36,943 bases of DNA from Calcarisporiella thermophila CBS 279.70 (lineage: Eukaryota > Fungi > Calcarisporiellomycota). The position numbers were made by a program, and so were the translations under genes. The number at the start of each line of letters is the position of its first letter. Position 1 is the stretch's first letter. This document shows positions 9,271-12,250 of the stretch, in pieces. A model generated the notes under the pieces. It was not told the DNA's origin. It was given only the letters and a program-made list of their open reading frames with translations, and ran no database searches. Where the stretch lies: positions 902,510 to 939,452 of the forward strand of contig NW_027192195.1 in the NCBI RefSeq assembly GCF_041956535.1, given 5' to 3'.

Positions 9271-12250
9271 ATGAAATATTATTTCATTGCATTGTTTTTA
9301 GTTTTGCCTAATCTTCTTTCCTCTGCGCAGGAGACTGGCTCCACCATTTCGAATTTTCCACCATGTGTCGTTGGATACAAGACCGATATATGGGCATTTG
9401 GACGTGTTTATGACCGAACGGGCATTTTTAACGCTCGTGCGCCTTTTAGCGTGAAGAACATTCCATGGACAAGAATCGGAGATTTACCTGCTATAATGGA
9501 AGGATATTGCGTACTAGGTTTAGACAGAATATATTTTTTAGGAGCGGCTGGCTCTTTTAGTGGAATTTCATCGGCAGATTATACTTGTAATTTAGGTAAA
9601 AATTATTGAATATTTAACTAATTTAGTATTTTTACTAGAATGATTTTTCACCATAGAGTATTCATCGACAACTTCCTCCTCTATTCAATCTACGACTTCG
9701 TCATTCTCTTCAGATAACTTGACGACAAGCATCTCTACATCTCAAAGCATTATCACGAGCACAATTAACTCCTTTCCAACATCACCAACGTCCAGTTCCT
9801 CTTATATTCCATCCTCCTTATCGTTTACCACCACGACCTCTTCGCTTCACCTGACAACTCCTACTCCAACCACATTAACATCTACTACAACAACGTCACT
9901 TTCGGAACCCTCTACTGCTGATAGCTTACCTGATGCTTCAGCAACAAATTCAATCGGAGAAGATAGCACAGACGAGGGTGTGATGGGAAAGAGCATACAT
10001 AGAAAAGGATTCCAAATAAAAAGAAATGTAAACGGACTGAACAAGAGGCAGAGCCAGATTCAACGTCCGGTATATTTTTATGACCTCGTCAAGAAGACTG
10101 TGTGCATACCGCCTCAACTTGGAGAAGGATTAGAAACGTTGGAGTTCGCTACACGCATTGTGGCTGCAATGATATCTAAATCCGAAATGTTTATTCTTGG
10201 TGGGCAGAACGGAGCCTTGCAAGCCTATCTTCTTAATGTAGATAAATGGTCTATTGAAAGCCTACATTCTGAGGGACCCAAGCCGGTAAATCTGCAGCCA
10301 CAGTCAGTAGCTGCTATCGTGGGATCGACTGTGTATTTATTTGGCGCTTATTCACCTGAAGATGTCTCTATAAGTGGCTCGTTCACTCTATATAGTTATG
10401 ATCTCCACTCTAAGAAGTGGAGTAAAGAGGCTAAATCAGTATTTGGCAATATATCTCAGTCACTAGTAGCGCCAGCCGCTGATAATCAAATATACGTAAT
10501 ACCAGTGCGTGGGACGGGATCAGGACCAGTGCAAGCTTTTGATCCTGCATCGAGAAACTTTCATTCTCTCGACATAAATAGCGATGGAAACGCGAGTTTC
10601 ATTCCCCAACAAAAGAACTTAATCTCGGCCCGCGCATTGCCTATGTATAACCAAATTGCTGTTTACAACTTCCTGACCAACGGTAGTGGAGAATATTTAT
10701 ATTCTCTAGATATTGATAAGAAGCAGTGGTCTCAGGTATTGGAGCCAACAGGAGACGCGCTTATTTTCCCAATCACCGCCTCGAATCAGAGCACAATCGA
10801 TTTCAAACTAATTATCGGTTCGGTTGTTGGTGGAGTGGGCGGATTAGCATTAGTAGTTGGAATCGTAGTATATCTAATCAGACGTCGGAGAAACCATAGA
10901 CAAAAGGAAATGACAATGTCTTCACACCGTAATTCTCTTCAAAGGAGCCGCCATTCCTTGAGGAGTATTGAGAAACGAACCGCTAAGGAGCAACCACTTC
11001 CCCTATCTCCCTCCTCCACAAAATTTGACTCGGGCTCAGCCTCATTCTTGTCTGACTCGCGTCTTGACCAGCGTGCGCCATATCTGACTCAGCTGTCAGC
11101 TATTCCTACCCATGACCCACGAGGTTCGCATCATCAAAACCGTCATTCGATATCGCATATATCTCCCCAAATGCCACGACATTTTTCACCACAGAACATG
11201 GAGCGAAGGAGTCTGAGTTTGAATAGACCGCGTGTGAGTATCGATTCTTATATCTCCTCTCCTGGAGGCGGCCTAGGATCTTCAATGGAACTAGGAGGAG
11301 ATAGCCCCCTCACCATGGCAGAGTTGCACGAAACGTATTTCAGCAGTCAACCCATGCTCCTTCATGAACACGAAATATTCCAATATCATCCTCACGCCGC
11401 GGGTGGCTCAATCATTTTGGATGAGTATTCTTTGATGGATGAACCAGTTATTACTGCCACAAATGGAGGACTAGTAAGACAGGCCGTACGAATGAGCGAC
11501 TCTAGCACCGTTTCTTTGGTATTTTTTGCCGACGAATACGCCTTCTGCCAAGAGGTCACCATTGCTCGCTATTTAGCTTCCCCTTACGTGATGAGGGTGA
11601 TTGAAGCCTTTGAGCTTCAAACTCCTGGTCACTTGCAACACATATCGCTGGTCTACCCTTTTCTACTTGTTGCAGAGCCAACTCGCTACCGTCTTGACCA
11701 AGTGATCCGGTCCCGTCCTAGTTTCGATGATGTGACCTATTGGCGCCTAGTAGCTAAGAATATTGCACAGTCGCTGATGCACCTACATAATCGGAAAATT
11801 GTTCATTTAAACCTGGAGCCTGCCTGCTTTTTCTCAGAAGCAGACGATATGACTACCTGGCAGCTTGCTGCATTCCACTTCGCCCACTTCTACGGCGAAA
11901 ACCTCCAAGACATCCCGTTGAGCAATTACTCTCCGCCTGAGCTTCTTCTCTTACATCCGTCTTCAGCTGCATGCTTCAAAATGGACATGTGGTCTGCAGG
12001 CTGCGTACTTTACGAGTTGTATACCCGTGTGCCATTATTTACCGATGCTGAAGATGCCCGCGCACAATTGATGGCCGACGGCGTTCAGTGGCAACCGCCA
12101 CTAAGAAATGTTCAGACTGATGAGTGGATAGTTCCTGAGAAAGACATTCGGGAGATTCTATTGGGACTCTTGCAAGTGATACCTGAGAAACGCTGGGATG
12201 CGACTTGGCTCTTAAGGATGTTAAATACCCCTCAACGAGACTTGTATTAA
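9271..12250 (+). CDS. Single-pass receptor-like pseudokinase: signal peptide, Kelch-like ectodomain with Ser/Thr insert, TM helix, degenerate protein-kinase domain, about 972 aa
   Basis: Exons 9271-9595 and 9657-12250 join in frame. Signal MKYYFIALFLVLPNLLSSA. Kelch-like strands DIWAFG, RIYFLG, EMFILGG, TVYLFG, YSYDLHSKKWS, YSLDIDKKQWS. TM LIIGSVVGGVGGLALVVGIVVYLI followed by RRRR. Kinase C-lobe motifs YSPPE, DMWSAGCVLYELYT, PEKR. Confidence 0.88.

What the first reader, a model, noticed from the sequence alone, without database searches (positions are those of the whole stretch)
9271..12250. Fungal single-pass receptor-like pseudokinase with a Kelch-like ectodomain
Seen: one spliced ORF links signal peptide, propeller-like ectodomain, one TM helix with an RRRR stop-transfer, a long Ser/Arg/His-rich juxtamembrane region and a complete kinase fold. 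All three catalytic motifs are replaced: the VAIK lysine position reads VSLV (11510-11521), HRDLKPxN reads HLNLEPAC (from 11804) and DFG reads AFH (11870-11878). Structural motifs (alphaC Glu in QEV, YSPPE, DMWSAG, PEKR) remain, which suggests selection for a scaffold rather than decay. Established: cell-surface receptor protein kinases are typical of animals and plants and essentially absent from model Dikarya, apart from ER-resident Ire1. Inference: an undescribed surface-sensing receptor or co-receptor class in early-diverging fungi, analogous to plant atypical RLKs.
Basis: partly seen in the sequence, partly recalled or inferred. Interest (0 to 1): 0.85.

Follow-up and report, generated by a model that had tools for sequence, protein, structure and literature searches.

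The report
Fungal Kelch-ectodomain receptor-like pseudokinase
This real gene of the fungus Calcarisporiella thermophila encodes a one-pass membrane protein with a propeller-shaped sensor outside and a catalytically dead kinase inside; it belongs to an apparently undescribed receptor-kinase family of Mucoromycota fungi, a kingdom reported to lack such receptors, and its relatives in arbuscular mycorrhizal fungi still look like working kinases.

Summary
Confirmed. The 972-aa spliced model equals NCBI's uncharacterised VTP21DRAFT_9462 of Calcarisporiella thermophila: signal peptide, Kelch propeller, one TM helix + RRRR, kinase fold lacking the beta3 Lys, catalytic Asp/Asn and DFG Asp. Four paralogues share the layout, all dead; two share the intron position. 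Relatives occur across Mucoromycota: dead forms in Endogonales, Umbelopsidales, Mucorales and Mortierellales (kinase dN/dS 0.11-0.29 in the two informative pairs), and intact non-RD forms, 49-93% identical to one another's reference kinase, in 8 genera of arbuscular mycorrhizal fungi. The family is one clade apart from Ire1 and the genome's other kinases tested (100/100). No active family member was found in this genome, so a plant-style co-receptor of a sister kinase is not supported; a ligand-gated scaffold is likelier. Published surveys report no receptor-kinase architecture in fungi. Not shown: expression, surface location, ligand, ATP binding. The scan noted a paralogue before (s1-605895).

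The parts
9271..9595 (+). Exon 1 (aa 1-108 plus first base of codon 109)
   Evidence: matches NCBI model P0001
9271..9327 (+). Signal peptide, about aa 1-19, cleavage inferred before Gln20
   Evidence: hydrophobic N-terminus; Gln at the mature start shared by three paralogues; SignalP not run
9349..9595 (+). First part of the Kelch beta-propeller (aa 27-108) with Cys32, Cys80, Cys106
   Evidence: pLDDT about 66-93; aligned with part 2 to one LZTR1/KLHDC2 propeller, Z 24; Cys32 and Cys80 conserved to AM fungi
9596..9656 (+). Phase-1 intron, 61 nt
   Evidence: GT..AG, 18% GC; same position (two codons + 1 nt after the conserved Cys) in paralogues P0004 and P0005; no RNA reads available
9657..12250 (+). 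Exon 2 (aa 109-972, stop TAA 12248-12250)
9659..10054 (+). Disordered insert in the propeller (aa 110-241): Ser/Thr-rich, then acidic, then basic
   Evidence: 57% S+T in aa 109-216; pLDDT under 50 for aa 114-241; present in paralogues, absent in AM-fungal members
10019..10051 (+). Two KR dibasic sites (K230-R231; K238-R239-Q240), Kex2-like
   Evidence: KR|Q invariant in three paralogues; KR frequent in ectodomains of Mucorales/Umbelopsis members; cleavage is inference
10055..10741 (+). Second part of the Kelch propeller (aa 242-470) with Cys258 and sequons N373, N420, N450
   Evidence: Pfam PF24681 E 1e-12; AlphaFold and fold searches
10808..10879 (+). Single TM helix (aa 493-516), Gly-rich N-terminal half with GxxxG spacing
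   Evidence: Kyte-Doolittle 2.54 over 19 aa; same helix in 33 family members
10880..10891 (+). RRRR stop-transfer / positive-inside cluster
   Evidence: 6 basic residues after vs 1 before the TM; same bias across the family
10892..11398 (+). Juxtamembrane region (aa 521-689), Ser/Arg/His/Pro-rich, poorly conserved except the last 30 aa
   Evidence: 31 S, 15 R, 14 H, 14 P in 170 aa; 26-27% identity to paralogues
11399..12247 (+). Pseudokinase domain (aa 690-972)
   Evidence: Pfam Pkinase E 2e-20; AlphaFold pLDDT 90.5, pTM 0.88; Foldseek TM about 0.74 to CDK/ULK1 at 17-24% identity
11510..11521 (+). beta3 motif VSLV in place of VAIK
11804..11827 (+). Catalytic loop HLNLEPAC in place of HxDxKxxN
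11870..11878 (+). AFH in place of DFG (DFE in intact relatives)

Best explanation
A type I membrane receptor that signals without catalysis. Shown by sequence and models: signal peptide, Kelch propeller, one TM helix, stably folded kinase domain with all four catalytic residues replaced, kept under purifying selection. Inferred: it passes through ER and Golgi (disulfides, N-glycans, O-mannosylated Ser/Thr loop), is cut by Kex2 at KR|Q into a two-chain propeller, and reaches the plasma membrane. There the propeller binds an outside cue (peptide or wall/microbial glycan; unknown), which changes pairing of the Gly-rich TM helices among the five paralogues; the dead kinase domain then works as a docking or allosteric platform for a soluble partner (most simply a cytosolic kinase of a MAPK-type cascade). 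It descends from an active non-RD receptor kinase that survives in arbuscular mycorrhizal fungi; catalysis was lost early in Mucoromycotina.
For: One open frame joins ectodomain, TM and kinase; five same-layout genes in the genome, profile score 269-307 bits (one split by an intron) against at most 69 for other kinases. Both sides of the intron build one propeller, Z 24 to LZTR1. N-glycosylation sequons are enriched in family ectodomains (274 vs 201 +/- 12 shuffled) but not in cytosolic parts (121 vs 115 +/- 9); basic residues follow the TM. Kinase dN/dS 0.11 (Fennellomyces vs metagenome relative) and 0.29 (Mortierella pair); in the query's paralogues the kinase is the best conserved part (44-47% vs 26-27% juxtamembrane) with synonymous sites saturated. 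Family clade 100/100, AM intact clade 98/97, Mucoromycotina dead clade 93/93 with motif columns removed. A plant non-RD receptor kinase, EFR, signals without its own catalysis (PMC8463890), a precedent for such a loss.
Against: No RNA or protein evidence for this gene. Location, ligand, cleavage and partner are all untested. Sequon statistics use related sequences, so they are not independent. Sequons and disulfides fit ER, Golgi or vacuole as well. Some family kinases have no TM, so the kinase domain can work off the membrane. dN/dS was measurable only in relatives, not on the query's own branch.
Confidence: 0.55

Rival explanations
1. A cell-wall or mechanical sensor in the manner of yeast signalling mucins and wall sensors (Msb2, Hkr1, Wsc1, Mid2): the glycosylated Ser/Thr loop is the sensing or inhibitory element, its cleavage or stretch is the switch, and the pseudokinase replaces their short cytosolic tails.
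For: 57% Ser/Thr insert ending in KR sites; a family member from a metagenome has only a signal peptide, a long Ser/Thr mucin stretch, TM and intact kinase (L050). The Msb2/Wsc comparison is from memory.
Against: The insert is a loop closed at both ends by the propeller, not a stalk; AM-fungal members lack it; the folded propeller is conserved across the family.
Confidence: 0.17
2. A co-receptor or decoy that pairs with a catalytically active transmembrane kinase, as plant BIR/DRIK1-type or animal HER3-type pseudokinases do.
For: Same overall layout; active family members exist in other fungi, including a Kelch-TM kinase in Umbelopsis that coexists in that genus with dead members.
Against: No active family member found in this genome: the active Ambispora and Umbelopsis kinases retrieve the dead paralogues first, then ordinary kinases at low scores. 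No TM was found upstream of 36 other kinase loci, but that is only about a quarter of the loci.
Confidence: 0.1
3. A sensor of an internal compartment (ER, Golgi, endosome, vacuole) rather than of the cell surface, functionally nearer to Ire1.
For: Topology evidence does not tell compartments apart.
Against: Not related to the genome's Ire1; no RNase domain; no C-terminal KKxx signal; conserved KR|Q sites suggest passage to the late Golgi (inference).
Confidence: 0.12
4. The domain keeps ATP binding or weak, non-canonical phosphotransfer.
For: Intact fold; some plant pseudokinases keep atypical activity (PMC9403797 abstract).
Against: Lys, catalytic Asp, Asn and DFG Asp are all replaced, and by different residues in each paralogue (V/E/R/N/E; N/A/S/N/T; A/S/G/N/G), the pattern of unconstrained sites.
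Confidence: 0.04
5. A decaying gene or a mis-joined model.
For: No transcript data for this species.
Against: Unbroken 868-codon frame; shared intron position and layout in paralogues; same layout in many genomes and on intron-free single-ORF contigs; purifying selection.
Confidence: 0.02

Closest known systems
Plant receptor-like pseudokinases (ZmDRIK1, PMC7158045; BIR-type, from memory)
   Same: Signal peptide, ectodomain, one TM, kinase fold without catalytic residues; presumed scaffold role
   Different: Kelch rather than LRR/lectin ectodomain; kinase not in the RLK/Pelle (TKL) group (Pfam PF07714 far weaker than PF00069); no active sister receptor kinase found in the genome
Animal receptor pseudokinases (HER3, PTK7, ROR, RYK, EphA10/B6; from memory)
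   Same: Type I topology, non-catalytic kinase domain
   Different: Those are tyrosine-kinase family; this is an unrelated Ser/Thr-type lineage with at most 24% identity to solved structures in fold search
Fungal Ire1
   Same: The main known fungal single-pass Ser/Thr kinase (PMC10463195)
   Different: ER luminal sensor, active kinase and RNase domain; the genome's own Ire1 is a separate gene on C4 and falls outside the family clade
Non-RD immune receptor kinases (EFR, XA21; PMC8463890)
   Same: Intact family members read HLD, HSD or FCD instead of HRD; EFR can signal without catalysis
   Different: Different ectodomain and kinase lineage; no immune function shown here
Kelch propellers of LZTR1, KLHDC2/3, plant specifier proteins; attractin ectodomain family (PF24981)
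   Same: Kelch-type propeller fold, Z 23-24, rmsd about 3 A
   Different: 9-17% identity; the structural matches are cytosolic adaptors; here the propeller is luminal or extracellular, interrupted by a 130-aa loop and fused to TM plus kinase

Membership tests
Pseudokinase (sequence definition) | Protein kinase fold present | tested here: met
   Pfam PF00069 above cut-off; AlphaFold pTM 0.88 and Foldseek prob 1.0
Pseudokinase (sequence definition) | Loss of beta3 Lys, catalytic Asp or DFG Asp | tested here: met
   All three and the catalytic-loop Asn replaced
Pseudokinase (biochemical definition) | No phosphotransfer; ATP binding status | not testable with these tools
   needs purified domain
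Receptor-like kinase architecture | Signal peptide + ectodomain + one TM + cytosolic kinase domain on one chain | tested here: met
   SignalP/DeepTMHMM not available, hydropathy used
Receptor-like kinase architecture | Plasma-membrane location and ligand-dependent signalling | not testable with these tools
   inferred only
Plant RLK/Pelle (TKL group) | Kinase domain belongs to the IRAK/Pelle/RLK clade | tested here: inconclusive
   No RLK/Pelle among best sequence or fold matches; PF07714 below cut-off; plant RLKs were not put in the trees, so exclusion is not formally shown
Ire1 family | C-terminal RNase (PF06479) and Ire1-type kinase | tested here: not met
   Protein ends with the kinase; only PF06479 match is on C4; Ire1 outside the clade, 100/100
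Kelch-repeat propeller | Closed propeller of four-stranded blades with Kelch-type repeats | tested here: met
   Pfam Kelch_1, Kelch_3, Kelch_6 above cut-off on the isolated ectodomain, PF24681 48 bits just under its cut-off of 50; 272 residues aligned to LZTR1 at Z 24.3
Signalling mucins (Msb2/Hkr1 type) | Long O-glycosylated Ser/Thr ectodomain, proteolytic activation, short tail without kinase fold | tested here: not met
   Ser/Thr stretch is a 108-aa loop within a propeller and the tail carries a kinase fold; cleavage untested

The most novel reading that the evidence does not exclude
Mucoromycota independently evolved a genuine cell-surface receptor kinase family with Kelch ectodomains. It stays catalytically active and highly conserved in many arbuscular mycorrhizal fungi, where it could perceive plant or microbial signals, and became a Kex2-processed, catalysis-free receptor in Mucoromycotina, including this gene.
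Probability: 0.5. Interest if true: 0.88.

Novelty: new variant of a known kind. Interest (0 to 1): 0.74.

Why it matters
[quoted passage not shown] This family is a counter-example spread over a whole phylum. It offers named candidate receptors for how arbuscular mycorrhizal fungi, Mucorales and Mortierellales sense hosts, bacteria or their wall, and a natural series from active to dead kinase within one family.

Tried and rejected
RNA evidence: no run was listed. Profile search with the TM-to-end alignment returned one new protein only, because candidates were capped. ESM Atlas gave generic Kelch+kinase or kinase clusters, no cluster of this family. The C-terminal 250-aa domain of the AM-fungal members has no Pfam, PDB or Atlas match. 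Pairwise BLAST of query vs AM ectodomains is not significant (E 0.006-0.08); profile-profile gives 96%, E 2e-9, which any Kelch domain might approach. A single origin of all dead forms, supported at 94 in the quick tree, fell to 32/15 once motif columns were removed: Mortierella forms may have lost catalysis separately. dN/dS of the two near-identical pairs rests on too few changes, and paralogue dS is saturated. Kwon et al. 2019 (pseudokinase census) was not held. Ten literature searches found no description of the family; most subscription journals are not covered. The spliced model was searched exon by exon by reference; the joined step was left out of the database searches, and the joined protein was used only as the database's own record P0001 and in a local translation check.

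Full report
Observation. Joining 9271-9595 to 9657-12250 gives 972 codons with no internal stop. The product is identical to NCBI's uncharacterised VTP21DRAFT_9462 of Calcarisporiella thermophila, an early-branching Mucoromycota fungus (placement from my own knowledge). The three replaced motifs are at the stated coordinates. Pfam finds a kinase (E 2e-20) and Kelch repeats (E 1e-12). Most of the ectodomain, the TM and the kinase lie in one 868-codon frame, so their fusion does not depend on splicing. The intron is GT..AG, 18% GC, and sits two codons plus one base after a conserved Cys in this gene and in two paralogues. No RNA run was listed. Database searches were run exon by exon; the joined protein was used only as the database record P0001.

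Ectodomain. AlphaFold with 20 family sequences folds aa 27-113 and aa 242-479 with block pLDDT of about 66-94 and leaves aa 114-241 disordered. The two folded parts align together to one Kelch propeller (272 residues, Z 24.3, rmsd 3.3 A to LZTR1; Foldseek). So exon 1 is needed to close the propeller, which supports the splice. KR|Q is invariant in the three closest paralogues, as are Cys32, Cys80, Cys106 and Cys258; Cys32 and Cys80 persist in arbuscular mycorrhizal (AM) members. I infer disulfides, O-mannosylation and Kex2 cleavage; none is shown.

Topology. One hydrophobic helix (aa 493-516) is followed by RRRR. Across 33 family members basic residues follow the helix, and N-glycosylation sequons are enriched before it (274 observed, 201 +/- 12 in shuffles, maximum 238) but not after it (121 vs 115 +/- 9). 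The sequences are related, so this is supportive, not a probability. It gives type I topology but not the compartment.

Kinase. The domain models at pLDDT 90.5, pTM 0.88 and matches CDKs and ULK1 at TM about 0.74 with only 17-24% identity: a complete fold with no close characterised relative. Lys, catalytic Asp, Asn and DFG Asp are all replaced.

Family in this genome. Four further genes have the same layout: P0004 (C9), P0005 (C35), P0014 (C46), P0020 (C5). A family profile scores them 269-307 bits (P0004 in two exon pieces) against at most 69 for any other kinase. All five are dead, with different residues at each catalytic position. Active relatives used as queries retrieve these dead paralogues first and then only ordinary kinases at low scores. 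Ire1 is a separate gene. A screen for TM helices upstream of other kinases found none in 36 loci, detected 4 of 5 family controls, and could not be finished.

Family elsewhere. Dead members with TM occur in Jimgerdemannia, Endogone, Umbelopsis, Fennellomyces, Apophysomyces, Halteromyces, Phycomyces, Mortierella and Gamsiella. Members with intact Lys, alphaC Glu, HLDxKPxN and DFE occur in Ambispora, Geosiphon, Cetraspora, Racocetra, Gigaspora, Dentiscutata, Acaulospora (72-93% identical to the Ambispora kinase) and Paraglomus (49-55%); most carry Kelch, TM and an extra C-terminal domain. No Glomerales (Rhizophagus) protein was listed, which I cannot explain. Umbelopsis isabellina has an intact Kelch-TM kinase of a side branch. 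Their glycine-rich loops are atypical and activity is untested. Some members lack a TM (two Mortierella proteins, Piptocephalis) and one has a mucin ectodomain. With catalytic columns removed, the family is one clade against Ire1 and six other kinases of this genome (100/100), AM members form a clade (98/97), and dead members of Calcarisporiella, Endogonales, Umbelopsidales and Mucorales form a clade (93/93); Mortierella is unplaced. The outgroup is small and sits on long branches.

Selection. Kinase dN/dS is 0.11 and 0.29 in two informative pairs of dead relatives; between the query and its paralogues the kinase is 44-47% identical against 26-27% for the juxtamembrane part, with synonymous sites saturated and frames intact. 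Neutral decay is rejected for the family; the query's own branch could not be measured.

Mechanism. Most likely (0.55) a surface receptor that signals as a scaffold: cue binding to the propeller, TM pairing, and recruitment of a soluble partner by the dead kinase. Intact members are non-RD kinases, a class associated with innate immune receptors, and one of these, EFR, signals without its own catalysis (PMC8463890); this is a precedent for the loss, not evidence of an immune role. Rivals: mucin-type wall sensor (0.17), internal-compartment sensor (0.12), co-receptor of an active TM kinase (0.10), residual catalysis (0.04), artefact (0.02).

Novelty. Kiss et al. 2019 report no receptor-kinase architecture in fungi (PMC6733946); Yin et al. 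2023 found 54 TM kinases in 18 fungi, with Ire1 the major family (PMC10463195). Ten searches found no description of this family, within the library's limits. Receptor pseudokinases are a known kind in plants and animals, so this is a new variant: new kinase lineage, new ectodomain, new kingdom. The scan reached a similar reading on a paralogue (s1-605895); that note is not independent evidence. Interest 0.74.

Noticed in passing
P0006:840-1092 and AM-fungal orthologues P0173-P0185; L050:5000-5620: Intact AM-fungal members carry a conserved 250-aa domain after the kinase with no Pfam, PDB or Atlas match; from memory it resembles the C-terminal part of Roco COR domains. Absent from all dead members seen.
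   Followed up: partly
L050:3242-5616 (JGI 3300047129, eukaryotic contig): Signal peptide + long Ser/Thr mucin stretch + TM + intact family kinase + the same C-terminal domain: ectodomain swapping within the family. Organism unknown.
   Followed up: partly
L043:3001-5516, L044:675-3216, L051:133-1431: Mortierella and Piptocephalis family kinases without TM, preceded by repetitive Thr/Glu/Arg/Gly-rich regions; two independent Mortierella sequences share the N-terminus.
   Followed up: partly
L019 (C27), L020 (C19), L021 (C10): Kelch-like ectodomain + TM + short tail genes with no kinase seen in the fetched stretch; possible receptor-like partners of the pseudokinases.
   Followed up: partly
one search hit list: No Glomerales (Rhizophagus, Funneliformis) orthologue listed although other AM orders have well-conserved ones.
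   Followed up: no
L013 (C46), P0014: NCBI's model of this paralogue starts at a downstream Met; the frame extends upstream into a hydrophobic signal-peptide-like stretch and the conserved Cys motif, so the model looks N-terminally truncated.
   Followed up: no
window:3915-35784: Neighbours are ordinary and unrelated: SYO1-like TPR, NIF phosphatase, GNAT acetyltransferase, methyltransferase, SAS4-like, amino acid permease, fungal transcription factor.
   Followed up: partly
window:24000-36000: GC rises from about 35-45% to 52-71% in the right third of the window, apart from one dip; paralogue P0005 also lies in GC-rich DNA.
   Followed up: no
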